This document shows, one piece after another, positions 3,506-64,000 of a stretch of DNA of 64,000 nucleotides; positions within the stretch are counted from its first letter, which is position 1, and each line of letters starts with the position of its first letter. The notes under the pieces were generated by a model, which was not told the DNA's origin, searched no databases, and saw only the letters and a program-made list of their open reading frames with translations. Location: NCBI RefSeq assembly GCF_001194135.2, contig NC_068991.1, positions 44,341,317 through 44,405,316 of the forward strand, given 5' to 3'. This stretch comes from Octopus bimaculoides (Eukaryota). A program made the position numbers and the translations under genes.

Positions 3506-4126
3506 GGCAAAAAATAAAGTCACAAATGAATGAGAATGAGAAAGTAGCTGATAAACAGATATAAACAAATCTGAATTGAAAGTAATTGCAGGTATCACGA
3601 GTGACAACAATACCTAATGATAGATATTGGAACTACAGTGCAATACGAGCTCTGAAAGATTGATAAACAAGATAACACAATTGATTTCATGATTTCATTC
3701 ACTAAGCTACACTACTTTATTGCCATTCATGAGAATCATCTTTCTGTGATTCATCTCTTTCATGGAGCTACAATCCTGGATCAAGCAAAGACCAAGATTA
3801 TGAATGTTGTCAGGTGCTCATTGCATTTTATCAGCCAAACAATAACAGTGAAAGTTCCATGCTTGCATTCTATAGAAGACTAGTAACAAACCCAAACATT
3901 TGTATACTACCCAGGCATTACTGAGTTGTAAAGTTGTATTGAGTAGGATTTTTTTTTTTTTAATTTCATTTGAATTTTTTCTTTTTTCATTCAGTTTTTG
4001 AGTAAATCCCTTCACTCTATGTAACATATCTTTGTGATCTCCCCTCCATCTGATGCCCGTGTGGCCAATAAAGAAAAGTCATTATCATTTATTATAATAA
4101 TAATAATAATGAATTTTAAATTGCAG

Positions 4127-4305
4127 ATTAGTGCAAGTCCTGTTAGAATGTCGGTACCAAAAAAACCAAGTGGACCTTCTACAACACCAAAGAACAATGT
4201 TGTAAGTGGTTCTTCTCTAACACGAAGAAGTACTTTTGGACCTGGAGATAATAAGACAAGTATAGAAAAAAATAACAGAACAACTAATGGTCAAGACTAC
4301 CGGAG
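4127..4305 (+). CDS. MARK: MARK/PAR-1 spacer exon (phase 0 to 2)
   Basis: ttgcag|ATT ... CGGAG|gtaaga; ISASPVRMSVPKKPSGPSTTPKNNVVSGSSLTRRSTFGPGDNKTSIEKNNRTTNGQDYR. The LTRRSTF motif resembles MARK spacer motifs. Confidence 0.85.
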
Positions 4306-4670
4306 GTAAGACATTTGAATTCTTTTGATATTGCTTTTGTTGGTTTTGTTATGGGTAAGTAGAAGAAAAGTATAATTTTCATCTTATTAGAATTTATGTA
4401 AACTAAACTTTTAATTTGTCTTCTGTTTTAGCTCAGTGGTGTTTGATTTATGCAAAAGCTTATATATTTCCTTGTATATAATAAACTTGCTAGTATGTTT
4501 ACTAATATTTTCAGATTTTCTAAATTATCTTTATTATTGTATTGAAATATAAACATATGTATGTGGGTTTTATTTTTTTTGGTTTTTTTGTAGCACTACA
4601 CAAATTACTTGAAGTAGTCTTTGACTTATTCTTAGATAAATTGTAAGATAGTCACCAGAAACTTATCTAA

Positions 4671-4889
4671 TCCTTTTGTTGCCATATTTCTTTTGAACTA
4701 CACCCTTTATAATGCAATTTGAAAAATATTAAATAAGATAGTAAAATAACTTCATCGTTATTAAGCTGATGTTTGAAACATAAATTAGCATGAAATTTTG
4801 ATAGAAAATTTTAATTTAAGATTACTTTAAAACAGGAAGTCTGTACCTTAGAACCAGAAGTGATCTCAGGTGGGATGGTATCAAAAGGG
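4671..4889. mobile_element. TTAA-flanked (piggyBac-type) MITE, copy 2
   Basis: ctaa-tccttttgttgcc ... ggtatcaaaaggg-TTAA (4890-4893), about 220 bp. Confidence 0.6.
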
Positions 4890-5329
4890 TTAAATTAACT
4901 ACTGAAATAGTTCTAAGATAGTAACTATACTATCAGTGATTGATAGTATTTGAAACAATTATTTGTCTGAAATTCAAGTAAAACTCATTTTTAATTATTA
5001 CAAAGCTTAATTAATTAGCAGTGTTAACTTCCAGATTGAACTCATCAAGTTGTGGGTTTGTGGTGCTCCAAAAAATTTGACCTTGAGCTCCATTAAGAAT
5101 TTGATTTATCAGTTCACCCAACTGTCCTTGTTATTTAATATGGTGCATATCGCACTAAAACTTCCATTAGTTCAAATTAATTCAATTCAGAAATGCAAAT
5201 AAATAAATAGATAGATAGATAGGTAATAATGATATTATTATTATTATTATTATTAATAATAATAATAATAATAATAGTAATAATAATAATAGTAATAATA
5301 ATAATAATAAATTACTTTCTTTAACATAA

Positions 5330-6240
5330 TAAACTGGAAAATTAGTGAATTGAAAAACTTAGAAGATCCAGGAGCCTATTAACAGCATACAGAAGTTGCC
5401 ACCCCGAAGCAGACACAAACAGTATATATGTACCTTACTCAGAAGGAGGTTGCGGCTTGACACAGATAGAGAACTACTATAACAGTTGGACTAGAAAAAT
5501 ACTTAGAAACAACAAGTGGATGACTACTACCTGTAATAAAGCAACACAGAAAAAAAGAAAATGCTTTTCTCTATACACAAGGAGTTGTCTCTGGCTGTCC
5601 AGTCCTAGCCAAATCTGAATATATAGACTGGCATAACTGATTAAGTAGTTATATCCACTGGGGAATATGCCAATACTACAATAAAAAAAAATGTTTTAAA
5701 CTAACAAGAAATGGTATAAGCATGCGCCAAACAATGTATATGACAACGACCAGGCCACTATCATCTGGGATTGGCTTGTTCAAACTGACAAAGGAATCAA
5801 AGCTAATCAAGGATTGGAAAAAAATACCTGCTTACTGATAGACATGGCAGTCCCTTCTAACCAAAAAGAAGTGGAGAAATTGTCACAGTACAAAGATCTC
5901 AAAATTGAAGTTTTGAAAATGTGGGGCATGAAGGTGAAAAAAGTACCAGTCATAAATGGAACCTTAGGGTGTGATAAAAAAACATATGAGTAAAAACATA
6001 GAAGCTATACCTGGACCCTCAACAATATACACTATCCAAAAAAGTAGCCCTGCTGGGAACAGCCCACATCCTATGCAAGACTCTATCAACCCAAGTAAAA
6101 TAATTCACAAACACAAAACACACTCTGTATGATAAATATTCAATAAAATAAACAACCCTTACAACAAGTACTCTACAGTTGGATATCCAACAGAACAACA
6201 CAACTCTCATTACACACACAACACAATACAAACCTTAATA
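5330..6240 (+). mobile_element. 5'-truncated R4/Dong-clade LINE remnant, copy 1
   Basis: Degenerate RSLLTAYRSCHPEAD..YVP.SEGG.GL, SGCPVLAKSEY...HN, LIDMAVP and P...GTLG segments (RT thumb to RLE region). Starts just after the (AAT)n array. Confidence 0.8.
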
Positions 6241-6539
6241 CAACAGAAGACTGTGCACTAATGCAGTACTAGACAGTGGCTCTCATGGCTTCTGATGTTA
6301 ACTGATTGGTAGTGTTATTATATACATAAAGTGCTTTGGTGTAAAAGATGGCCTACAGCAAATATTCTGCTCAATACCACAGATTTGCTTGTCACTTGCT
6401 TGATTGTAACCAGTTGAACATGTCCCTCAGTGACTGACAATATGTGAATCTTTGATTATGAGCAGTGGAGGAGCATCAGTCATGTGTTGGGAGGGATTCT
6501 TTGGGGTTTTAATAATTCAGTACTGGAAAAATGGGTGTT

Positions 6540-6800
6540 TCATTTATCATCCTTAAACAACCCTTATTCAGAGACCTCTTGAGCAGGATGGGCTACTCAA
6601 CTTGAAGAAAATTCTAACTGGTTCCCACCTGCTAGGTCATGCACTGTTTATCTTGATAGGAGATCACCATGTCATGCACATATTGTTGTGGTCCATGTAC
6701 CTGGTGTGCCCATATCAGATGGGTAGTTATGTTGAGTACATTGGGCTTCATATATTTGTAACCCAGTGTCATTTTGATGACATGCATTGTTCTTTCACTC
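6540..6800 (-). mobile_element. SINE-type interspersed repeat
   Basis: Degenerate copy of a repeat I recognise from octopus DNA (reverse complement of ...gacatggtgatctc.tatcaagataaacag...). Recognised from memory only. Confidence 0.45.
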
Positions 6801-6814
6801 AATAATAATGATAA

Positions 6815-8160
6815 TAATACCAGGAGAGTTAAAAAGCTATTTAGGTCTAAGCTAAGTGGAGGGAACCTGATTAGAGGCATCAATGCATGGGCTGAAGGTG
6901 TGATACCTTACTATGCAGGAATTGTGGAATGGATAGAAAAACTAGGTAAGTAATAGCTATGCATGGGTGCCTAGAAATTTGCCTGAAACTCTCAATTGTT
7001 GAATAATAATAATAATACCAGAAGAGTTAAAAAGCTATGTAGGTCTAATCTAAACAAAGGGAACCTGATTAGAAACATCAATGCATGGGTTGTAGATGTG
7101 GTATGCTACTGTGCAGGAGATGTGGAATGGACAAAGGAAAAACTGGTCAACATGAACGGGAAAAGTAGGAAGATATTGGCTATACATGGATACCTTTATA
7201 CTAGCAGTAACGTAGCAGAGTTTTACTTAGGAAGGAAGGTGCAAGAGGACTGGTTGGAATAGAGGATACTGTTGTGAAGGTGATTAAGTCCTTGCATCCC
7301 TATCTCAGAAATAGTGATGAAAAAATGTTGCAAGGTGTACTTAATGACAATGATAAATACAATATGAGAACTAATAGAGAAAAGATCATCAACTGAAAAG
7401 AGAAAGTCTTACACGAGAGTTTTTCAAACAGCAAAGGAAGCTGATGAAAAATCCTGGGTATAATTGAAATATTGTATTTTTTTAAAGGAATAGGCAGAAA
7501 GACTGATTGTTGCTGCTCAAGAACACCTTTATAAACCATCTCGATCAAGTGTAGCATTGTTAAAACAGCAGTATCACCTTTGCATAGACTATATGAAAAA
7601 TCATCTAAGACAGTTAGACATATTAGTTGATCTCAAAACTGGCTCAAAAGGAGTACAAAAGATACAATAACTAAGTGGCAGTGCAAGTATACTGGGAGTT
7701 GTGCAGGAAGTATGGGCTAGAATGTTCCAACAAATGGTATAAGCACCAACCTTGCCAGTAGCAGATAATGATCTGGTGAAATTCACACGTGATATGCCAA
7801 TATATGCAGACAAAAAGCTGAAACATAATTGACCAGATATTACTCTCCTACAGAAAGAGTCCAAAGAATGGATCTTCATTGATATAGCTATACCTACAGA
7901 GTAGAATATTGTGAAGACCTAGGATTGGAAGTGGAAAAAAATCCATAAAACCTAAAGATTGAGTGTAGTATCTATTGCGATTGGTGCACTTGGGACCATC
8001 TTAAATACCAAACTTTGTAGGAAGTATTCAATAGGCAGCAATACTTGCAACAGCTCAGTTGGCAGCAATACTTGCAACAGTTGATGAAAGTGTTTTGTCT
8101 CTAAGCTGCAGGATGGAGCTGAGACATGACATAGATAAATCAGTGGAAGTTAAGTGAATA
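6815..8160 (+). mobile_element. R4/Dong-clade LINE remnants, copies 2 (6815-6960) and 3 (7015-8160)
   Basis: RRVKKL..S.L..GNLIR.INAW, GRKVQEDWLE (degenerate GGRGL) and PDITLLQKESKEWIFIDIAIP (RLE). Each copy starts after (AAT)n, and copy 3 ends in an (AAT)n tail. Confidence 0.8.
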
Positions 8161-8189
8161 AAAAGAAAATAATAATAATAATAATAAAG

Positions 8190-8740
8190 AATAAATCATC
8201 TTGCCTCTGGTTGTCCAGTTCTGGCTAAGAAGGAATATATCCACAGACATGGCAGTTTGGTTCTATATACACTGGAAGCTGTGCCAGCACTATGGAATGA
8301 CAACAGAAAAATGCATATCCCAGAAAAGGTTTCAGAAAATGACACAACAACCATTCTCTGGAGTATATCAATACATACAGACAGAAAGATCAAGAATAAT
8401 AAACCAAATATTGTCATCAGGGACCATCAAGAAAAGAAATGGCTTCTAATAGACATATCAGTCACAAAAGATGACAGTGTATCTCTTAAAAGAAGCATAG
8501 AATCTCTCAAAATAAAAAAGTCAGAAATAATCCCTCTAATGGTAGGTGCATTAGGTATGGTTGAAAAACATACACATACATAATCAAAACATTAGGACTT
8601 ACAAATATAATATACAGAAAATAGCACTGCTAGGCACTTCCTATATAAAGCACTTACAATAAAAATAACATCAAAACAAACCATAGCATTTACTCAAGGC
8701 CTGCAGTTGTGCTTGATATTGATAAAAATCTGACTACTGA
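8190..8740 (+). mobile_element. R4/Dong-clade LINE remnant, copy 4
   Basis: HLASGCPVLAKKEYIHRH, then PEKVSENDTTTILWSISIHTDRKIKNNKPNIVIRDHQEKKWLLIDISV and IPLMVGALG. Bracketed by (AAT)n. Confidence 0.85.
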
Positions 8741-8754
8741 ATAATAATAATAAT

Positions 8755-9340
8755 CCTTTCTACTAAAGGCATGAGGCCTGAAATTTTGTGGGAGGGGGCT
8801 AGTCGATTACATTGACCCCAGTGTTTCACTGGTACTTAATTTATCAACCATGAAAGGATGAAAGACAAAGTAAACTTTGGTGGAATTTGAACTCAGAACA
8901 TAAAGGCAAATAAAATGCCACTAAGCATTTTGCCTAGTGTGCTAACAATTTTACCAGCTCACCACCTTAATAATAATAATAATCCTTTCTGCTATAGGCA
9001 CAAGGCCTGAAATTTTGGGGAAGGGGACTAGTCAATTATAATGATCCCAGTATGTACCTGGTACTTATTTCATCAGTCCCGAAAGGATGAAAGGCACAGT
9101 TGACCTAGGTGGAATTTGAATAATAATAATAATGGTTTCAAATTTGGCACAAGGACAGCAATTTGGGAGGAGGGGCTAATTGGGTACATCAACCCAGTGC
9201 TTGACTAGTACTTACTTTAGTGACTGAAAGGATGAAAGGCAAAGTCAATCCTGGCAGAATCTGAACTGTGATTATAAAGATGGATGAAATGCTGCTAAAT
9301 ATTTTGCCTGGCATGCTAACAATTCTGTCAGCTTGTCACC

Positions 9341-9342
<2 letters not shown>
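8755..9342 (-). mobile_element. three tandem tRNA-derived SINEs (8755-8968, 8984-9119, 9134-9342) separated by (AAT)n
   Basis: Reverse complement of the aaggyggtgagctgg...gttcaaattcc...ctttcatcctttc...gaccccag family with (ATT)n tails. Confidence 0.8.
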
Positions 9343-9376
<34 letters not shown>

Positions 9377-10166
9377 TACTCTTGTGTCTTTCTCCATCAC
9401 AACATATGAATGAGAAAGGAATGGGTGATAGATGAATAAAGAAAGAAGGGTAAAAAAAAAAAATGAAACCGTTTGAATTCTGTGTGAATATATATATGTG
9501 TGTGTATGTAAGAAAAATCAAACAGCATTTCAACTCTGTGTGTGCGTGTACAAGAGAAGTATGTGAATGTATGTGAACATTGACAAGTGTATTAATTTGA
9601 TTTACCATCCATATTTATATATAAAATACTACAATTAGCCATCATTTTTGATGGTACGGGGCCAACTAGTAATAATGATAATGTGCTGATATCTTATGGC
9701 CTAGTAAATTGTATTACACTGTTTCTACTTGGTGTATTTGGACACTATGAAGTTTTTCCAAATTTATTATTATACAATCTAGCATTGTATAATTTTCACT
9801 GCATGGCACTAATTACACAGATCACTAAAATTTGGTTCTAGAAATTTTAAAAATATTGAATATTTTAATGTCAGTAGCACATAATTGCATTCTAATGGCT
9901 TGATTATTTGGAACAATTGTCTAAAATGTAATTAAAACTTTTTTTTTTTAATTATTACTATGCATAATTAATTTGACTGGAAAATAGAGAATGCTATGAG
10001 GGTAGAATTTCATTCAGTTTTCTTAACATAGTATGCATTTTTCAGAAAATTATTTTGGAATCATTTAAAAATGATAACAATTTTGTTGCATTTGCCATTC
10101 AAGATTAGCTGCTTCTGCCTTTCAAGCTAATTGTTTGTTCCAGAAATAGTTCTCGTACAAAATTTG

Positions 10167-10205
<39 letters not shown>

Positions 10206-12176
10206 CAGTGAAATGGATATATATTTTAATTTCTATCATTATTTTACAGTAATACAAAGCACATTATTTAGTAATATTATCTCTAATACATTATTATATA
10301 ACTAGTATGCTGAGTTTCCAGCATATTGTCTATTCATGTTATGAAATTTAATACATCTGGTTGATGAAAGAGGAAAATCTAAATGTGTGTCAAGTCTATA
10401 AATTTGCTTTAGCTTAGGATGATGAAGCTGCTTCTACTTTGGTTGTAAACTTATTTCAAGAATCTGTAACTCTAAACACAAGAAAATGGTATACAAACTT
10501 TTGAATATAGTTTTCAGTTGGAATTTTGTTTTTAAATATTTTCCATTTATACACTGACTAACAGTCATAATTAGGAAAATATTTACTTTCATTTAAAATG
10601 AAAATTTTCAATTTGATATGCATGTAAACTTTGTAGACCAAACTATTTCTTCTACTCCCTAATTATACATCAACTAACTAAACTATTATCCAACAAGTTA
10701 CTAACTCATACTCATCTAGTGTTATGTGGTGGCTATTTAAACTTTCATGAAGATGGGGACTTTCTGAAAATGTTAAAAAGAAAACTCATGTGCAATGCTT
10801 ACTTTAACCAAAAAAGCAAAACTTTAAATTGCTTTCCTTTTTAATAATCTGAATTTTTATCATTCACATCAGAGGTTGATGGAGGAACTTTGTCCTGTCA
10901 AATGAATTTAATAGATTTATTCAGATGTCCTAATTATTGATTTCTGTTTGGAAAAAATACTTTTTGAAGGACTGGTTTTTATTTTGTTTTTTGTTTACCT
11001 GAAATGCTGTTGAATTCTATTGAGTATAATTGGTAATTATTTTTGTTTGTCATATTCCAGTTTTGACTCACAGCAAATTCTTGTAACAAATCACTTTTAC
11101 TTATTTTCACTTCTGGTAAATTACATTAATTTCGGCCCTGCACAACCATTTAAAGTCTGCTGGATATCTTTACATCATGGAGTCAATATTTACGAAAAAA
11201 AAACCAAACAAACTCTAAGCTTTCTTTAAATAACATTTTATTAACATTAATTTTTACTTACATAAACTACTTGTAAAAGTCAAGTGATCTACACATTTTC
11301 TAGATTACTTCCATTTTGTTATACAAAATTAGATATACTCATAAGTTTATTTATTAGATTCTCTTATGTTCTGTATTGAACACTGAAAAAACATGGTTTT
11401 TAAGTAGTTTAGTTTTTAATTTCTACCCAGCAAATTGAACTAATATTAATGGTATATAAATTTCTTTAATAGCTCTGAGGCAATCAGAAAGAATATGTTG
11501 CTTGATCCAAAAATAGGTGACGTTTCTTTCCATTGAAGATTATTTCTTTGACTGCTTCCAGTTCATCTTGGAATTGTTTTGCCTCTTATATTTCCCACAA
11601 GCCTATAAAAAGTTTAACTTTTTGTAAATAAAAAAGGAACCAGATGAGTTCTTTTAGTCAAGATAATTGTCTTCTACACATGATGTTAGATAAAATATTT
11701 TTAGTTTGATTTTTCTTTGGGCCAAAATCACTCTGTTCATATAATTCTACACAAGCTCAGCATATCAAAATTTCAAATGCTTCTCTTAGAGTTTCTTCTG
11801 ATTCCATTAAGGAACACAATACACATATTTCAAAAATAGGAATATTAGAATAATCAAACTGGAGAAACATCCAAAAATAGTTTTACTGCTAATTACTTAA
11901 CATGTTATCATTATATCAACACTTTTCTATCACATTGTTATTATTATACTGTCTGATGGCTCTGGTTTTGCTGCAAAGATTCTATGGTTTTAAACTTTTG
12001 TTTATGCAAGAAATTCTACAAATACAGAAGATCAAATATATTATGCTACTCATCAATGCAACAGCTATTCAGATTTACCATATGGATTGATTGGCCTTCA
12101 TCAGTGTCTCTGCCTCATTTCCTATTAGTAACTCTGCCTGTTGTAATGAACCTGAGAATCTGCTTTTCTCTTCCAG

Positions 12177-13057: not shown

Positions 13058-14868
13058 CATTTTTTTCATCAAATTGAAAATTTTGTGATGCAGTTATTAC
13101 TTAACAATTCCTATCCCCGTTTATCATTTAAACAGAAAAAAAAATAAAGGGAAATAAGTCTTAAATAAGCATTTTTGTCCTCAAAAGTTGATATCCATTT
13201 TTGCTCTTTCTTACAGGACTGTGTAACTAATTATAGAACTACTCTAGATTTAATTTATATGGACCTATGTTGTGTCTGTTGAAGTGTAAAATTTTGCTTC
13301 TAGTGATGTAAAATTCTGTTCAGTTACTGCGAACTCAAATGAAATATGTTTTTTTAATTATTATTATATAGTTAAATTGATAATTATTTTCTTAGACAAT
13401 TTCCAAGTTCTCATATAAGTTTCTATTCATATACTTTAAATTATGTTCTTTAAGTAAAGCAGTATTAAACAGGTTCCTCTTACTTATGAAATGTAAGATA
13501 GTGGATATGATAATGATTCAAGGAATAAGTGTTGATGTGGGAATAATATTAACAGCAACAACAGTAATAATTATTATTGCTTTTTATCTAATTTTTACTG
13601 TTAAATAAAATTATTTCAACTAAAAATAATTTTTTAATGATTAGTTTATTTCCTTATTACTGAACAACTTATGTTTCTAAGTATCTTGCATATATTTGTT
13701 GGTGTGTGTCTGTATGAGCTTTGGATTTGCACAAAATTTTGACTGAGTTTTTGTTATTTATTTTTTCTAAAATTTATTTACAGATTTTAAAATGTTGATG
13801 CTGATTTGTTATCTCATGATTGTGTATTTAAGTTTTTCAGTCCCTTTTTTTGTTACTAATACTTTGAATTTTATGCCCCAAACCCCCATTTTTTAATGCA
13901 TTTTTCTTGGATTATTATTTTGTAGATTAGAAACATTTTTCAATATTGTTAATTATCACTAAAGCTTTAAAAAAGTTTGATGTATTGGGTACCCACCTAC
14001 TTCATAAATTACAGTAAATCCACACTGTCAAGTTAGAAAATCATTCTTTAGAGCCCAAAAATATATATACCAAAATATCTTTAGAAGAATTCAGTTCTAC
14101 TTCCACCTCTTATATAATTCTAAATTGAGCAGAGGGCAATATTAGTCTTTTTGACTCCTATTGATTTTCCTTACAAAATTTCAGATTTTGTGTCGTAGGA
14201 AATTACAGTTATCAGTATGGTAAAGATGAAGTATCAGAGAGCTTAGTCTTTATGTTATGTACTATCTCTCACACAGTAATAGATTCAAATATTAGTGTTA
14301 ACTTTCATCTTTATTCTGTGAAGTTGATAAAAATAAGTATCAAGTAATGAATTTGATTTCTTAGTAAAAGTGTGCTATAGGGACAAAAAAAAAAAAAAAA
14401 AAAAAAAAGCAGCTCTATTATTGATATGTTCTAAACTACAACAGAGATTTTTTTGGTGTCTTATATAATCAGTTTATTTTATTTCCCATTGCAGCTACTT
14501 AGTTATACTGATGTTTTTAGGAAAATCAATGTTTGAATTTCACAAATCACTCACTATACCAAGTTTTGTCCCTCTCTAAAATTTTAGCAGCAACAACTTT
14601 GTTTTACAACTCCCACTGCTACAAACTGCATGGATTACATCATACCTTTTCAATAGAGATTATTACTTAAGAAATTTTAAAAACTGTATCTGATTCAGGT
14701 CATAAATTTTAACCTGATCTTGCCTGTGCTGCATGTAAAAGTATGCAATATATAGCTTAATCATTTAAATCATCACATCTTGAATACATTTACTGTAGTC
14801 CACTCTGTTGCAAGCATATGGGCTAGGTATCTGGTCTGGGGATAACTTCTTCACACCAGCCACAAGTG

Positions 14869-33655: not shown

Positions 33656-34133
33656 GTTACTGTTCAGGTCACTGCTTGGAATCAAACTCGGAATCTTGGA
33701 GTAATACAACATTTCGCAAATATCTCCTTGAAATAAAACCACCAATAAGAGAATATGACCAAAGACTGCATGTACTCCATCCCATGCGACTGTGGTAGGT
33801 TATACAAAAGCAAAACATGCCGCCCCCTCAAAATAAGGGCAGACGAACATCACAAAGCTGTGACACGAGAAGATATTGATAAATCGGGTATAGCTGATCA
33901 TGTATGGAAAAATGGAGACCACTTCCCCCTGTGGGATGAAGTTAAAATAATAGACAGAGAATACCACTGGAAAATATGGAAACTAAAAGAAGCAGCACAT
34001 ATGCTAGGACACAACAATCTCCTAAGCAGACCGAGTGCAGATATGAACAGCATATGGGAACCGGTATTAAGGAAGGATAGGAGAATATTAGATTTATATA
34101 TAAGCCCTAAAATTCACTCCATAATTGCCCACA

Positions 34134-34203
34134 GGCATATGGCGTAGTGGTTAAGTGTGCGGGCTACTAATCCCAAGATTCCGAGTTTGATTCCAGGCAG
34201 TGA
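34134..34203 (+). other. tRNA-like segment with Pol III A and B boxes inside the Penelope terminal repeat
   Basis: A box TGGCGTAGTGG (34140-34150), anticodon-like arm GGG-CTACTAA-TCCC, B box GAGTTTGATTCC (34183-34194). No convincing acceptor stem, so not a functional tRNA. Confidence 0.7.
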
Positions 34204-34317: not shown

Positions 34318-35744
34318 AACAACAAACAAGATGAGGACAAATATCCGTTGAATGTAAATAATGTACATAATTCCTCATCTCTTAAATATAGATCAGTAGG
34401 ATTCTTATGAGATAAAGAAGAACAATCTCAAATTGCTTAAAGAACCTAATAATAGCAAGAAGTCTCACACCAAAAACAGTCTTTCAGATATTGAAAACAC
34501 ACTCATACTCCCCAAGAAAAAGAAAGGGAAGAGAAACCAAGGCAGTTGAAGATATAAAAGGAACCCTAAGCCTGCTACAAATCTGCAGAAGAATCTGTCA
34601 TGTTGCGCTACTTGATAGAGCCATTGTTTATTACAACAGTCACTGACTGCAGACCCTAGGAGGTTAAACATTTCCTAAGTGTTTTCACCTCCTCACTGGA
34701 CAATATGCAAATAAGCAAGCATGATGAGTTTTTCAACAATGCAGCTCCACACACAGAAGAAACAAGTATCCATTTCATTGGTGTGTGGAACTGAGCATCA
34801 GGCCTTGATTGTTTTCCAGTTATTGTTTTAAAAACAAGAAAGCTCTTGTAAAACTGTTGCAGATTCTTTTACCAGAGTTTCCTCACAAATAGCTAATTTC
34901 CCAAAATGTTAGAAGAGGTATCATATGCCCTATCCACAAAGGTGGGAGCAGAGCAGATGCTAACAAATACAGACCTATCTCTCTGACTCCACATGTCTGC
35001 AAAGCCATGAAAAACCTTGTCAGAAAGAAGCTGATCACTTCTTAGAAGAAAATGACCCACTCATTGACATACAGCATGGCTTTAATGCTGGAAAGAGCTG
35101 CCTCACACAGCTATTACAACTTTATGAGTTCTGAAACAACAACTCAACCAGTCAATTGTAGATGTGATATATCTTAATTTTGTCAAGGGTTTCAACAAAG
35201 TCAATCATGGGATGATCTGTCACAAATTGCATGACTTTGGTATCATTAGTAAACTAAGGGAATGGTTGTGTGACTTTTTTTTTTAAAGTCACAACCAATG
35301 GTCTTCTCTCTGAGAAGACATTAATACTGATTGAGGTGCCTAGGAAACTGTATTAGTTCATGGTGATTCCCTCAGACATACTTCAATCAGATACTCAACC
35401 ACTCTCACCAGGTATACTGATGATAAAAAAAAAAAAGTATCACAAGCATTCAAGGACCCCGAAGATACTATGGAAAGATTTGAACACAGTATTCAAGTGG
35501 GTTTAAGAAGTCACTATGCAACTCAGTGCTGACTGTTTTCAAGTATTCTAATATCGACTCGCAAACATTGCAATCAAAATATACAGGGCCAAGGAGTCAT
35601 TATGGCTGAAAGCAATAATAGAATAGAATTAAAAAAATTTATATATATATGTGTGTAATGTGTATGTTTGTATATGTAAGTATAGGTATATATATGTATG
35701 TTTTGATATATGTGTGTTTATGCAGCATAAACATGTCTTGGCTG

Positions 35745-35880
35745 TGTGGAAATATTACCTTTCTTGGAAACAAGTGAGGGTTGGTGACAAGAAGGGCATC
35801 CAGCTGTAGAAAAATCTGCCTCAATAATACTTTGTTCAACTCATGCTAGCCTGGAAAAGTAGACGTTAAAGCAGTGATCA
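35745..35880 (+). mobile_element. SINE 3' fragment
   Basis: ggttggtgacaagaagggcatccagctgtagaaa ... catgctagcctggaaaagtagacgttaaa. Confidence 0.7.
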
Positions 35881-42104: not shown

Positions 42105-42450
42105 NNNNNNNNNNNNNNNNNNNNNNNNNNNNNNNNNNNNNNNNNNNNNNNNNNNNNNNNNNNNNNNNNNNNNNNNNNNNNNNNNNNNNNNNNNNNNNNN
42201 NNNNNNNNNNNNNNNNNNNNNNNNNNNNNNNNNNNNNNNNNNNNNNNNNNNNNNNNNNNNNNNNNNNNNNNNNNNNNNNNNNNNNNNNNNNNNNNNNNNN
42301 NNNNNNNNNNNNNNNNNNNNNNNNNNNNNNNNNNNNNNNNNNNNNNNNNNNNNNNNNNNNNNNNNNNNNNNNNNNNNNNNNNNNNNNNNNNNNNNNNNNN
42401 NNNNNNNNNNNNNNNNNNNNNNNNNNNNNNNNNNNNNNNNNNNNNNNNNN
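42105..42450. other. assembly gap covering the 5' end of the MARK KA1 exon
   Basis: 346 N, preceded by cctaat and a pyrimidine tract and followed by in-frame coding sequence. Confidence 0.99.
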
Positions 42451-42715
42451 NACCAGCTCAATGGATCCTAATGATATGATGAAAGAAATTCGCAAAGTCT
42501 TGGATTCAAACAACTGTGATTATGAGCAACGGGAAAAGTTTCTCTTGCTCTGCATCCATGGAGATCCAAAAATAGACAGCTTAGTACAATGGGAGATGGA
42601 AGTGTGCAAGCTTCCAAGACTGTCATTGAATGGTGTTCGTTTCAAACGGATTATAGGGACATCAATAGGATTCAAAAATATTGCATCCAAAATTGCCAAC
42701 GAACTGAAACTTTGA
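42451..42715 (+). CDS. MARK: MARK/PAR-1 terminal exon encoding the KA1 domain (5' end lost in gap)
   Basis: [87 protein letters not shown], the characteristic MARK KA1 C-terminus. Stop TGA at 42713-42715. Confidence 0.98.
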
Positions 42716-50103: not shown

Positions 50104-50324
50104 TCAATATTGAGGGAAATTTGGTACTAGTTGGGCCCAAGCTGAGATACCACCTCGTATGTCTTTTATAATCAGGTTGGTAAAAACTTCCTGTAGCTTT
50201 TTCACTGCAATTTGTGAATCATTACCATGGTGACACACCACCACAATCAATTTCCCCTGATCTTGGTCTTCTGAAAGCAGTGACTTGATTTTCTTTGCAT
50301 TTCTTATGTCAGACATTGGAATAT
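50104..50324 (-). CDS. MOCS3: MOCS3 terminal exon, rhodanese active-site loop
   Basis: (N)IPMSDIRNAKKIKSLLSEDQDQGKLIVVVCHHGNDSQIAVKKLQEVFTNLIIKDIRGGISAWAQLVPNFPQY*. Matches the MOCS3 CxxGNDSQ.AV and D..GG..AW...FP.Y C-terminus. Only the aag| acceptor at 50325/50324 keeps frame. Confidence 0.96.
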
Positions 50325-52074
50325 CTTTCTGTTAAGGAGTAAAATTCCACCACTGAAAATCATGTACAGAAGAAAATCATTTGCAATGAATGTATACGTT
50401 AAATATTACTGCAACACTAAAACTACCAAAAAAAAAAAAAATCTCAAAACCAGTATTTAGAGGTAATGATAATGGTTACTTTCACTAAGTTATTGTTATA
50501 TACTTATTGAATAAGAGCTGTGATTACCTAAATTTAAAAGTTTTTAATGAGAATCTATAAGTATACAATATTTTACATATTTGTTATGTAGATTTTCAAT
50601 CATCACAAATGCCCCAAATTGCATAAGATGAATTCAATATAAACAAATTCATAATTAATTGTAAACCTCCTATTCATTTATAGTGTTGAGATTCCAAAAC
50701 AAAATTTAACACTAGAGACAATTTATCATCATCACATTTCCATGCCTGCATGGGAATTGGATGAGGCAGGTTTCCTATGACCTGATGCCCTTCCTTTTGT
50801 CAACTTCACTTGTTTCCATAAAAGGTAATACTTCCTCATAGCCTGACATGTTCTCATGGAAGATTGGAAATTGTGGACACCATTTGTACAATGGTAATAC
50901 TTCTTTACAACTTGTAAGCAATATCAAAGACATGGAGACACTTATATATGTGTGTATATGTATATAACAAATGCCTTTCAGTTTCCATCTACCAAATCAA
51001 CTCATAAGATTTTTGTTGGCCCAGGAGCTATAGTTGAAGACACTCAAGTTTCTTCTACAATTTATTCCACTGATCACATTCTGCACTCAGTGACATTGGT
51101 TATCTGGAGTAACAACATGTAGCACACATGGGAGGATTTGACCAATGGACCAAGTGAGAGTTCATGTTTCACACTTACAAAGCAGNNNNNNNNNNATGGA
51201 CCCAGTGAGAGTTCATGTTTCACACTTATAAAGCAGAATTATAACAATTTCTGTGAATATTCTCTTTTCAAACTGTCTGGAATGGGCTCTACATATCTCG
51301 ATGCTCTTCAAGCCTGTCGTGAATATCCTGCTGAGTTCACATCCTATCACTAGCACTGTTGTTGTTGTTTAGCTCCAGGTCAATTCAGTTTCATTAAACC
51401 TATGATCAAATGCATTCCAGCCATGAATATTCAATCTTATATTCAGTGTGTGACACACAACTATGTCCTTGTTTTAGGTGATATGATACGACAGAAATTA
51501 GCTACTTTTAATACATGAGCTGTCATATAGAGGTTCCTTTAATACATTGTATCTACAGGCAACACATTTTCAATGAACAACTCCCGTCTAGAAATAAGTA
51601 TTGCAATTAGCTTGATTCAGCAAGTAGTGGCAATATAGTGCAGTTGAGTATGTCATTAACTTAGTGTAGCAGTTATTGTTCCTCATTCATCATTGACATC
51701 AATGTTGATAAATGAATTGATATTCTGCAGTGGAGTTAATGATTATTTCATTTATATACAACAGCTGAATTATAGGCTTTCATATAAAGCCATGTACAGT
51801 TGAAAACCTTCTATCTCTAAGAACATTACTCTTTCATCCATCTAAAGTACTGGCACCAGGTTGATTATTGTTTTCTATTAGAAAACTTTACCTTTTTGTT
51901 TTTAACCTTATTGTAGATATTAAATCTGGTTTCTTCTCTTTCAACTACATTAATTGTACATTTTTGTTTGAAATTATAAGTTTTACAGATTTGTCCAAAA
52001 CAGTGGCTCTTGACTATTTGCAAAAGTAATCCAAATAATTCTGTCACAGTTTTCAATGCAATTCAAAAGGATAC
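50325..52074 (-). other. MOCS3: U12-type (minor spliceosome) GT-AG intron of MOCS3
   Basis: 5' splice site GTATCCTTTT (52074-52065), branch point TCCTTAAC (50338-50331) just upstream of the AG, and no canonical polypyrimidine tract between them. Confidence 0.88.
51186..51195. other. 10-N gap flanked by a duplicated ~40-bp sequence
   Basis: atggacc(a/c)agtgagagttcatgtttcacactta(c/t)aaagcag on both sides. Confidence 0.95.
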
Positions 52075-52174
52075 TGATAGCCTTCTTTGGCAGAGAACAG
52101 ATTTCTAATTCAACAGGTTGTCGAACATCAATAAGGACATGAGGCAAGTGTTGGTCAAGAAAAGTTTTGTATTC
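52075..52174 (-). CDS. MOCS3: MOCS3 rhodanese-domain exon 1 (phase 0 to 1)
   Basis: ttgcag|GAA ... ATC A|gtatcctttt; EYKTFLDQHLPHVLIDVRQPVELEICSLPKKAI (DVR..E..IC.LP motif). Confidence 0.93.
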
Positions 52175-58307: not shown

Positions 58308-58355
58308 CGCTGCTGAAATTCGATGTTCATTTGACAAAGTGGATACATGAGTTTC
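58308..58355 (-). CDS. MOCS3: MOCS3 48-nt linker exon (ETHVSTLSNEHRISAA)
   Basis: atattttcag|GAA ACT ... GCA GCG|gtaagt, phase 0 to 0. Fills the linker expected between DK and the rhodanese domain (human CRSLQLLSPEERVSVT). Not in the supplied ORF track. Confidence 0.9.
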
Positions 58356-62376: not shown

Positions 62377-62537
62377 CTTATCATTTGATTGAGAGCCACA
62401 AAACTGTTCGTAGTCTATCAGCTTTGGTTTTGACCCATCTCCACAAGCAATGCAGTTCTTTTGACTTGGACGAAGTTTTACTTTGTGAAACGAGCAATCC
62501 ATACCATCAAACAGAAGTAAGTGCTGTTTCAGTGAAG
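62377..62537 (-). CDS. MOCS3: MOCS3/UBA4 exon: end of MoeB-like adenylation domain with Zn-binding CxxC
   Basis: xSLKQHLLLFDGMDCSFHKVKLRPSQKNCIACGDGSKPKLIDYEQFCGSQSNDK, donor AAG|gtaggt. Acceptor atttag| at 62537, with an in-frame alternative acaatag| at 62543. Aligns to human PSYSGSLLLFD...CAACG...DYEAFCG. Confidence 0.93.
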
Positions 62538-63109
62538 CTAAATCTATTGTTAAGGCATAATGCATTTACTATATTACAGTTGTCTTTGTGTTTGCAAATT
62601 TATGCAAATATGTGACAAGTACAGGAAATTAATTATAAAAGGCAAAAAAGGATGAAAGTGTGGATATGTGGTCAAACAGTATGTTTTTCAAACACATTTC
62701 TGGGTTTGATACTATAGCACTAATGTCATCTATCATAAACACTGAATGACTTAAACTTTCTAAGTGAAATTTTTGTATCATTCTGTCTTATCAATAATAT
62801 TAATATGCCAACTTGTTCTTTTTGTACGTATGGACCTGTGGTGTGTGTCACACTTACTTCAGAGGAAGAAGTGAGTGGCAAAGCAAGAGAAAGGCAGTAA
62901 GAGAGAAAGAGAGAGAGTGAGAGAAACAGTAAATGGTAACGGTGTTCGTTTTGTGTTTTTAAATGTTTCAGAGAAGAAGTAAGAGAGAATGAGAGAGAAA
63001 GACTGAATGAGAGAGAGAGAGTGAGAGAAAGAAAGAGAGAGTGAAAGAGACAGTGAGTGATGACAGCGTTCATTTTGTTTTTAAATGTTTATCACATCGC
63101 AAGAAAAGT

Positions 63110-63363
63110 AGATACATAAATTGAAAGAAAAGTTGATACATAGATACATACACACATTGATAAATTAAAGCAGGAGAGAGGAGGGACACAGAGGAAATGA
63201 GAGAGACAGTAGATACATAGATCAAAAGAAAAGTTGATACATAGATACATACACACATTGTTAAATTAAAGCAGAAGAGAGGAGGGACACAGGAAATGAG
63301 AGAGACAATAGATACATAGATCAAAAGAAAAGTTGATACATAGATACATACACGCATTGTTAA
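63110..63363. repeat. 2.5-copy minisatellite, period about 100 bp
   Basis: gatacata....aaagaaaagttgatacatagatacatacac.cattg.taa units start at 63111, 63212 and 63311. Confidence 0.9.
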
Positions 63364-64000
63364 CTCAAAGACAAATAACTACAGCAAATACTGGATGTCA
63401 CTTTCACTTTTCATTACCACATGAGGATAAAATTAACTCACAAGTGGCAGAGTACTCCACAGATATGCATATCATTACCATAGTTATCAGAGATTCAGCC
63501 TCGCACAGAACAACTCATTTTGGCCAGCTGAGTGGACTGGAGCAAGGTAAACCATCAAGTTGTTGGAAGAAAACGGAAAAAGATCTTATACAGGGGCAGG
63601 AAAATCCTTTTAGTCATTAGGGTCACCATGAGTGTTAATCAGGTCCTAACAGCAGCATTTGTGGGTCTCACAGATCTGGAGGCCAAGCCCCCAGATAAAC
63701 ACTGATGCGCAGGCTGTTATTATCAAACTGAGTGAGAGTCAAGGGTGATTACATGATGGAATAACAATTATTTTGTCTTAGCTTTCACTGCTTATACTAA
63801 ACACATGATGTTTTTGCCTTACGATATGAAACATTTCCTTTCCTTTCACTCTTTTTTAAAAAATGGCATTCCATCAGTTACGATGACAAGGCTCCTTTTT
63901 ATCTGATCAATGGAACAGTCTGCTCATAAAATTAACGTGCAAGTGGCTGAGTACTCCATAGACATGCATACCATAAGGTAGTTCTCAGGGAGATTCAGCT

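What the first reader, a model, noticed from the sequence alone, without database searches (positions are those of the whole stretch)
50325..52074. Complete U12-type intron splitting the MOCS3 rhodanese domain
Seen: donor A|GTATCCTTTT and 3' end ttttacTCCTTAACagAAAG|. A CAG 4 nt upstream would break the frame, whereas the AAG gives ...KKAI-N-IPM..., matching the human ALHIPL position. Established: GTATCCTT and TCCTTAAC are the U11 and U12 recognition sequences, U12 acceptors are chosen by distance from the branch point, and human MOCS3 is intronless. The branch-to-AG distance here (about 8-9 nt) is at the short end. Inference: an ancestral minor intron lost in the vertebrate lineage could place Moco synthesis and tRNA thiolation under minor-spliceosome control. 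U2-trained predictors will probably mis-splice it.
Basis: partly seen in the sequence, partly recalled or inferred. Interest (0 to 1): 0.75.

Follow-up and report, generated by a model that had tools for sequence, protein, structure and literature searches.

The report
Conserved minor-spliceosome intron in octopus MOCS3
The flagged sequence is a genuine U12-type (minor-spliceosome) intron in the Octopus bimaculoides MOCS3 gene; it is one of three such introns in this gene that have been kept since early bilaterian animals, so it is a real and rather neat example of a well-known kind of feature rather than something new.

Summary
On the minus strand an intron runs from 52074 to 50325. It starts A|GTATCCTTTT and ends TCCTTAACAGAAAG|. 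Only this junction restores the frame and the invariant Asn-x-Pro of the rhodanese domain.

The window is identical to the public Octopus bimaculoides chromosome. The spliced peptide is 100% identical to RefSeq MOCS3 (XP_014770747.1), so the public model already uses this junction.

The 10-N gap lies about 870 nt from either splice site. It is flanked by a 41-nt near-duplicate and affects only the intron's length.

The gene has three U12-type introns out of 11. All three are shared, with the same position and phase and RTATCCTT-like donors (19 of 21 exact, two with one mismatch), by Argonauta, a scallop, a chiton, Lingula, a hemichordate and a shark.

"Lost in the vertebrate lineage" is therefore wrong as stated. 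A shark keeps all three, while a turtle gene is a single exon. The bumblebee has lost exactly these three.

The branch adenosines sit at -8/-9. That is the shortest of the 21 orthologous introns measured, against a reported optimum of 11-13 nt.

Regulatory "minor-spliceosome control" remains untested. This is a new member of a known kind, of modest interest.

The parts
50325..52074 (-). MOCS3 intron 11 of 11, U12-type GT-AG, phase 1, nominal 1750 nt including the gap
   Evidence: Exact protein-to-genome mapping of XP_014770747.1; frame test; conserved position and type in 7 bilaterians
52067..52074 (-). 5' splice site GTATCCTT (U11/U6atac recognition motif), 8/8 match to consensus
50331..50338 (-). 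Branch-point sequence TCCTTAAC (U12 recognition motif), 8/8 match; candidate branch adenosines at 50333 and 50332 (-9 and -8)
50325..50327 (-). 3' splice site AAG; the CAG at 50329-50331 is only 2-3 nt from the branch As and would break the frame
   Evidence: AAG also used by Argonauta
51186..51195 (.). Assembly gap (10 N) inside the intron, flanked by 41-nt near-identical copies at 51145-51185 and 51196-51236
52075..52174 (-). MOCS3 exon 11 ([33 protein letters not shown] + first base of the Asn codon)
50104..50324 (-). MOCS3 exon 12, coding part (..NIPMSDIR...CHHGNDSQ...NFPQY, stop TGA at 50106-50104)
58308..58355 (-). MOCS3 exon 10, a 48-nt mini-exon (ETHVSTLSNEHRISAA) with U2-type flanks (ttcag| and |gtaagt)
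62377..62537 (-). MOCS3 exon 9 (SSLKQHLLLFDG...CGSQSNDK)
62538..64000 (-). 3' part of MOCS3 intron 8, a second U12-type GT-AG intron. BPS GCCTTAAC at 62556-62549, second A at -13, acceptor tttag|. Its donor GT|GTATCCTTCA lies about 1.75 kb beyond the window end

Best explanation
Window 52074-50325 (minus strand) is the last intron of the Octopus bimaculoides MOCS3/UBA4 gene, and it is removed by the minor (U12-dependent) spliceosome.

Inferred mechanism, from the established model of U12-type splicing:
- The U11/U12 di-snRNP binds the intron as a unit. U11 (later U6atac) pairs with the GTATCCTT 5' splice site, and U12 pairs with TCCTTAAC, bulging one of the two adenosines as the branch nucleophile.
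- There is no real polypyrimidine tract, so the 3' splice site is picked by proximity to the branch. The CAG 2-3 nt downstream is too close.
- The next AG (AAG|, 7-8 nt from the branch A) is therefore used, joining ..KKAI to NIPM.. and restoring the rhodanese domain.

The intron is one of three U12-type introns in this 12-exon gene. All three date back at least to the protostome-deuterostome ancestor.

Shown: sequence signals, unique frame-restoring junction, identity to the annotated protein, and conservation of position, phase and type.

Inferred: which spliceosome acts, which A is the branch, and any effect on expression.
For: Signals in Octopus:
- Perfect 8/8 matches to both U12-class consensus motifs sit exactly at the homology-defined exon ends. 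The chance of this is about 5e-8 per intron.
- Only this junction keeps the frame and the invariant N and P of ..AI-N-IP...
- The spliced peptide is 100% identical to RefSeq XP_014770747.1. O. sinensis XP_029642587.1 has the same residues at the junction.
- Spliced transcript assemblies of other cephalopods read ..PAINIPISD.. and ..PTINIPMSE...

Conservation:
- At the orthologous position, all with phase 1, Argonauta, Pecten, Liolophura, Lingula, Ptychodera and Heptranchias all have |GTATCCTT. Five of the six also have a BPS-like motif (0-1 mismatch) with the second A at -11 to -13; the shark's best motif has 3 mismatches.
- Across 8 species, donors at the three U12 sites have 0-1 mismatch to RTATCCTT, while all other introns have 2-6.

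Other:
- The last 20 nt are purine-interrupted (Y fraction 0.65, ending AACAGAAAG). That is a poor U2 acceptor, and GTATCC is a poor U1 match.
- Molluscs, including Octopus sinensis, are reported to have conserved minor introns (PMC10639083).
Against: - No RNA-level evidence from O. bimaculoides itself was available here: no junction reads, lariat mapping or knockdown.
- The branch-to-3'ss spacing (A at -8/-9) is shorter than the reported 11-13 nt optimum (PMC3584512). It is the shortest of the 21 orthologous U12-type introns measured, so splicing could be inefficient or a different branch could be used.
- No formal classifier (intronIC or MIDB scoring) could be run.
- The orthologue gene models are computational annotations.
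Confidence: 0.9

Rival explanations
1. It is a hybrid or 'minor-like' intron that the major (U2) spliceosome can also remove, so MOCS3 expression does not really depend on the minor spliceosome.
For: GT-AG termini are compatible with both machineries. Some U12-consensus introns are reported to be spliced by both (PMC10853781 abstract; intron taxonomy in PMC11347168). In the cnidarian Xenia the orthologous intron has a U2-like GTATGT donor and a pyrimidine-rich 3' end, so type switching at this site has happened.
Against: The donor GTATCC pairs poorly with U1. There is no polypyrimidine tract, and the 3' end is AACAGAAAG. The acceptor is AAG with a competing CAG 4 nt upstream, which a U2-type scan would prefer and which breaks the frame. 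The RTATCCTT donor is strictly conserved in 7 bilaterians.
Confidence: 0.06
2. The intron is U12-type, but because of the very short branch-to-AG distance the 3' splice site is used imprecisely or slowly in Octopus. This would give substantial intron retention or use of other 3' sites and make this intron a bottleneck for MOCS3 output.
For: The second A is at -8 in Octopus against -11 to -13 at the same site in six other species. The optimum distance is 11-13 nt and U12-type 3'ss selection is reported to be error-prone (PMC3584512).
Against: intronIC's BPS search region extends to -5, so such short spacings are contemplated for real introns (PMC7367187). The protein must be made, because it is a single-copy essential sulfur-relay enzyme by established knowledge. 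There is no alternative in-frame AG nearby. No expression data were available.
Confidence: 0.25
3. The motifs are a coincidence in an ordinary U2-type intron.
For: Each 8-mer alone occurs at chance frequency in the window. Loose motif pairs arise in 64% of simulated windows.
Against: Placement exactly at both exon ends has a probability of about 5e-8. The same donor motif is found at the same position in six other species spanning four further phyla, and at two further introns of the same gene.
Confidence: 0.01

Closest known systems
U12-type (minor-class) GT-AG spliceosomal introns, as catalogued by U12DB, IAOD/intronIC and MIDB
   Same: RTATCCTT 5' splice site, TCCTTAAC branch-point sequence close to the 3' end, no polypyrimidine tract, GT-AG termini (the commonest subtype, about 72% in human and mouse, PMC6717393), and deep conservation of position and type across animal phyla.
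   Different: The branch adenosines are only 8-9 nt from the 3' end, against an optimum of 11-13 nt. The acceptor is AAG rather than YAG. The host gene is intronless in human (my own knowledge) and in a turtle (shown here), so it is absent from human-anchored minor-intron gene lists.
Genes with multiple minor introns (in both human and mouse, 50 genes with two and only 3 genes with three; PMC6717393; non-random clustering, PMC7367187)
   Same: Three U12-type introns sit in one gene, consistent with the reported tendency of minor introns to cluster in the same genes.
   Different: Here 3 of 11-12 introns are U12-type and all three are retained together from molluscs to a shark. Where losses occurred they removed all three: the bumblebee selectively, amniotes together with every other intron.
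Non-canonical-terminus minor introns (AT-AA, GT-TG; Larue & Roy 2023, Table S1)
   Same: The gene's intron 5 (off-window) is GT...TG in Octopus and Argonauta, and ATATCCTT...AA in the shark. Both subtypes are listed among conserved animal minor introns.
   Different: GT-TG is very rare (29 cases, 0.039%). The flagged intron itself is canonical GT-AG.

Membership tests
U12-type (minor-spliceosome) intron | 5' splice site matching [G/A]TATCCTT at +1 to +8 | tested here: met
   GTATCCTT, 8/8, at 52074-52067
U12-type (minor-spliceosome) intron | Branch-point sequence matching TCCTTAAC / TTCCTTRAY near the 3' end | tested here: met
   TCCTTAAC, 8/8, at 50338-50331
U12-type (minor-spliceosome) intron | Short, constrained BPS-to-3'ss distance (optimum 11-13 nt; PMC3584512) | tested here: inconclusive
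   Branch As are at -9/-8. That is shorter than the optimum and the shortest of 21 orthologous U12-type introns, but still inside the -55..-5 region that intronIC scans.
U12-type (minor-spliceosome) intron | No distinct polypyrimidine tract upstream of the 3' splice site | tested here: met
   Y fraction is 0.65 over -20..-4, and the last 9 nt are AACAGAAAG.
U12-type (minor-spliceosome) intron | Orthologous introns at the same position are also U12-type | tested here: met
   Same position and phase with a GTATCCTT donor in Argonauta, Pecten, Liolophura, Lingula, Ptychodera and Heptranchias. Xenia has the position but a U2-like donor.
U12-type (minor-spliceosome) intron | Formal classifier score (intronIC SVM probability above 90%, or MIDB PWM bins) | not testable with these tools
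   intronIC and its PWMs are not installed. Only consensus-mismatch counts were computed.
U12-type (minor-spliceosome) intron | Excision depends on U11, U12, U4atac and U6atac snRNPs; branch at the bulged A of the BPS | not testable with these tools
   Needs knockdown and lariat mapping.
U12-type (minor-spliceosome) intron | Host organism possesses a minor spliceosome | not tested
   No snRNA gene is in the window (Rfam scan empty). The literature lists Octopus sinensis among species with conserved minor introns, and molluscs as relatively enriched (PMC10639083).
MOCS3 / UBA4 / CNX5 adenylyltransferase-sulfurtransferase | ThiF (E1-like) domain followed by a C-terminal rhodanese domain with an active-site Cys loop | tested here: met
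   The window peptide hits Pfam Rhodanese (E = 1.3e-11) and carries the C-x-x-G-N-D-S-Q loop. It is 100% identical to XP_014770747.1 (ThiF + Rhodanese). The ThiF-encoding exons lie outside the window.

The most novel reading that the evidence does not exclude
MOCS3 was a triple-minor-intron gene in the bilaterian ancestor, and the three U12-type introns have been kept together for more than 500 My because slow or limiting minor splicing tunes the output of the URM1/MOCS2A sulfur-relay enzyme, and with it molybdenum-cofactor synthesis and tRNA wobble thiolation. On this reading, lineages that lost them (insects selectively, amniotes by wholesale intron loss) rewired that control. The unusually tight branch-to-AG spacing in Octopus would then be a lineage-specific adjustment of splicing efficiency.
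Probability: 0.12. Interest if true: 0.6.

Novelty: new member of a known kind. Interest (0 to 1): 0.33.

Why it matters
As a single U12-type intron it is ordinary. Mollusc genomes hold hundreds of them, and the public gene model already splices it correctly.

The modest added value is comparative.
- MOCS3 turns out to carry three minor introns out of 11-12, conserved in position, phase and type from molluscs and brachiopods to a hemichordate and a shark. In human and mouse only three genes have that many.
- Human MOCS3 has no introns, so this ancestral minor-intron gene is invisible to human-anchored analyses of minor-intron evolution and disease.
- The gene is a compact natural test set. It offers a canonical GT-AG intron with an extreme branch-to-AG distance, a GT-AG intron with optimal spacing, and a rare GT-TG/AT-AA intron.
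- It also documents one selective loss of the three U12-type introns (bumblebee) and one wholesale loss of all coding-region introns (by amniotes).

Tried and rejected
- **Motif counts as evidence.** Both 8-mers are at chance frequency in the window, and a loose pair within 20 kb occurs in 64% of simulated windows. This was not used as support.
- **CAG acceptor 4 nt upstream, and +/-1 nt shifts of both sites.** These give a frameshift or the loss of the invariant Asn.
- **A hidden coding exon in the gap.** Rejected because the junction aligns without any gap to 12 orthologues.
- **An alternative upstream branch site (TTTTAC, A at -15).** This is much weaker pairing than the adjacent perfect TCCTTAAC. 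It is not excluded experimentally.
- **First protein search with the window peptide.** It found only fragmentary Logan hits. The profile search was swamped by insects. Only the search with the closest relative's full-length protein reached annotated molluscs and deuterostomes.
- **Branchiostoma locus look-up.** It failed.
- **Rfam scan of the window.** No hits.
- **Literature searches.** MOCS3 or CNX5 together with U12 or minor intron gave nothing relevant. Supplement searches found no mention of mocs3, and PMC3939875 is not held.

Full report
**1. What is in the sequence**

The feature lies on the minus strand.
- The upstream exon (52174-52075) ends ...CCAAAGAAGGCTATCA.
- The next bases are GTATCCTTTT (52074 downwards).
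- The intron ends ...GGAATTTTACTCCTTAACAGAAAG at 50325.
- The last exon starts ATATTCCAATG at 50324.

Joining 52075 to 50324 gives ...[22 protein letters not shown]...CHHGNDSQ...NFPQY*. Using the CAG 4 nt upstream gives an early stop. Moving both sites by one base changes the Asn codon. The junction is therefore unique.

Pfam places a Rhodanese domain at residues 63-162 of the 170-aa C-terminal peptide, and the junction is at residue 97/98.

**2. Is it more than chance?**

Taken alone, no.
- GTATCCTT occurs twice in the window (2.1 expected) and TCCTTAAC four times (2.3 expected).
- In 300 first-order Markov simulations of the window, 64% contained at least one RTATCCTT...TCCTTAAC-N(2-14)-A[G/C] pair within 20 kb on one strand.

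The motifs count because of where they are. They sit exactly at both ends of an intron whose boundaries are fixed independently by protein homology. With the intron's own base composition, that has a probability of about 5e-8.

**3. The gap**

- The 10 Ns at 51186-51195 are also present in the public assembly.
- They lie 879 nt from the 5' splice site and 861 nt from the 3' splice site.
- The 41 nt on either side are near-identical, with 2 mismatches. This looks like two contig ends that overlap but were not merged, so the true intron may be about 50 nt shorter than 1750 nt.
- The gap is intronic, so frame continuity across it is not an issue.
- No residue is missing at the junction relative to orthologues, so no coding exon is hidden there.

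**4. Identity of the locus**

The window is identical over 15,897 nt to Octopus bimaculoides GCA_001194135.2, chromosome CM046611.1.

The four exons in the window are:

| Exon | Window coordinates (minus strand) |
|---|---|
| 9 | 62537-62377 |
| 10 (48-nt mini-exon) | 58355-58308 |
| 11 | 52174-52075 |
| 12 (coding part) | 50324-50104 |

Together they encode a 170-aa peptide that is 100% identical to the C-terminus of RefSeq XP_014770747.1, 'adenylyltransferase and sulfurtransferase MOCS3'. The public model therefore already uses this junction. Octopus sinensis XP_029642587.1 has the same residues there. The ThiF-encoding exons lie beyond position 64000.

**5. The whole gene**

Exact mapping of the protein onto the 36.5-kb locus gives 12 coding exons and 11 introns.

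Eight introns have GTAAGT, GTATTG or GTAGGT-type donors and pyrimidine-rich YAG acceptors. Three do not:

| Intron | Position | Donor | 3' end |
|---|---|---|---|
| 5 | phase 2, ..IIQ\|HYD.. | CA\|GTATCCTTTT | CTCTCCTTAACTTATCTGTG\| (ends TG) |
| 8 | phase 1, ..GLQ\|SSLK.. | GT\|GTATCCTTCA | TGCCTTAACAATAGATTTAG\| |
| 11 (the finding) | phase 1, ..KKAI\|NIPM.. | CA\|GTATCCTTTT | TCCTTAACAGAAAG\| |

The 3' end of intron 8, including its branch-point motif at 62556-62549, lies inside the window. Its donor is about 1.75 kb beyond the window's end.

**6. Comparative evidence**

The same mapping was done for seven further annotated genes.

- *Species that keep all three.* At all three positions, always in the same phase, these species have a U12-type donor: Argonauta hians, Pecten maximus, Liolophura sinensis (chiton), Lingula anatina (brachiopod), Ptychodera flava (hemichordate) and the shark Heptranchias perlo.
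- *Donors.* In these seven bilaterians (Octopus included), donors at the three sites have 0-1 mismatch to RTATCCTT. Donors of all other introns in all eight species mapped have 2-6 mismatches.
- *Site iii 3' ends.*

| Species | 3' end at site iii |
|---|---|
| Argonauta | TCCTTCACCTTCAAAAG\| |
| Pecten | TCCTTAATTCTGACCTCAG\| |
| Chiton | TCCTTAGCATTTCCTAG\| |
| Lingula | TCCTTGACACTGTAACAG\| |
| Ptychodera | TCTTTAACCACCAAATCAG\| |
| Shark | weaker motif, TCCTATGC |

- *Spacing.* The second A lies at -11 to -13 in all of these species and at -8 only in Octopus. Octopus has about 3 nt less spacer than Argonauta.
- *Cnidarian.* Xenia has the site ii intron with GTATCCTTTA. It has the site iii intron at the same position and phase, but with a U2-like donor (GTATGTTTTT) and a pyrimidine-rich 3' end. 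It lacks site i.
- *Bumblebee.* Bombus pascuorum keeps four of the ancestral U2-type introns and none of the three U12-type ones.
- *Turtle.* Pangshura tecta has a single uninterrupted 454-codon ORF next to a glycosyltransferase-family-2 gene.

**7. Interpretation**

By parsimony, all three introns were U12-type in the last common ancestor of protostomes and deuterostomes. Site iii as a position predates the cnidarian-bilaterian split, but its type at that node is ambiguous.

'Lost in the vertebrate lineage' is not: a vertebrate keeps all three. The loss seen in amniotes is a loss of every coding-region intron at once, after the divergence from cartilaginous fishes.

**8. Mechanism (inferred from the established model; PMC3584512)**

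- The U11/U12 di-snRNP recognises the 5' splice site and the branch-point sequence cooperatively.
- One of the two adenosines of TCCTTAAC is bulged and attacks the 5' splice site.
- The 3' splice site is chosen by distance from the branch rather than by a polypyrimidine tract.
- In Octopus the CAG ends only 2-3 nt after the branch adenosines and is too close to be used.
- The AAG 7-8 nt away is the first usable AG and the only one that keeps the frame.

The reported optimum is 11-13 nt, so this is at the short extreme. It is the shortest among the 21 orthologous U12-type introns I measured. It is still within the -55..-5 region that intronIC searches. Whether it lowers efficiency or fidelity is unknown.

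**9. What is known**

- Minor introns are under 0.5% of introns, are deeply conserved, and cluster non-randomly in genes (PMC7367187).
- In both human and mouse, only 3 genes have three minor introns (PMC6717393).
- Molluscs are relatively rich in minor introns, and Octopus sinensis was included in a survey of more than 3000 genomes (PMC10639083). MIDB now covers 263 species (PMC11347168).
- GT-TG termini are listed as a very rare subtype, 29 cases or 0.039% of conserved animal minor introns. AT-AA is the commonest non-canonical subtype.
- No paper in the searchable library links MOCS3, UBA4 or CNX5 to minor introns.

The intron is therefore almost certainly present in automated catalogues, but it has not been described. 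Ancestral-state analyses anchored on human introns cannot see it.

**10. Verdict**

This is a real U12-type intron that is correctly annotated in public data. It is a new, undescribed member of a well-known class.

The extra findings make it a tidy case study rather than a surprise:
- three conserved minor introns in one gene;
- a rare GT-TG/AT-AA orthologous pair;
- an extreme branch-to-AG distance;
- selective loss (bumblebee) and wholesale loss (by amniotes) of the introns.

The proposal that Moco synthesis and tRNA thiolation are 'under minor-spliceosome control' is untested. Dependence follows from the intron type; regulation does not.

Noticed in passing
window 62538-64000 (-); BPS at 62556-62549: This is the 3' part of a second U12-type intron (MOCS3 intron 8). 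It reads GCCTTAAC, then 11 nt ending in the acceptor tttag|CT, so the second A is at the near-optimal -13. Its GT|GTATCCTTCA donor lies about 1.75 kb beyond the window end. It is conserved as U12-type in 7 bilaterians, and the cnidarian Xenia has a GTATCCTT donor at the same position.
   Followed up: yes
L004 10457-12193 (Octopus), L005 5264-8129 (Argonauta), L010 about 13825-13896 (shark): A third U12-type intron of MOCS3 (intron 5) has non-canonical 3' ends. It is GTATCCTT...TCCTTAAC-N10-TG| in both octopods (GT-TG, a very rare subtype). In the shark it is a 72-nt ATATCCTT...TTCTTAAC...AA| intron (AT-AA; the boundaries are ambiguous because of an AATAT repeat). The other species end in AG.
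   Followed up: partly
L012 (Pangshura tecta) 1001-2365; L002 (Bombus pascuorum): The turtle MOCS3 CDS is a single exon beside a Glycos_transf_2 gene, so all introns have been lost. Bombus retains four ancestral U2-type introns but has lost exactly the three U12-type ones.
   Followed up: partly
window 42452-42715 (+), after the gap at 42105-42451: An ORF ending ...[41 protein letters not shown] is a KA1 domain (Pfam E = 3.6e-19). It is the C-terminal exon of a MARK/Par-1-like kinase gene, convergent with MOCS3.
   Followed up: partly
window 33755-34147 (+): A 130-aa ORF carries a GIY-YIG-like motif (YSIPCDCGRLYKSKTCRPLKIRADEH). It has no Pfam hit. It may be a remnant of a Penelope-like or other mobile element, but that resemblance is from memory only.
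   Followed up: partly
window 63107-63370 and 62970-63060: A 101-nt tandem repeat (2.6 copies, 93% identical) and an (AG)n-rich simple repeat lie inside MOCS3 intron 8.
   Followed up: no
window 50762-50852 vs 35730-35823: A 95-nt stretch of the flagged intron is 78% identical, in inverted orientation, to a sequence 15 kb away. It is probably a dispersed repeat fragment.
   Followed up: no
L011 (Xenia sp.) 3599-11286: The annotated 585-aa Xenia MOCS3 model repeats the last three exons (EYKKLID...NLPIRDI...IVAVCRY twice) across a 7-kb 'intron' with non-canonical ends. It looks like a tandem duplication or assembly duplication fused into one gene model.
   Followed up: no
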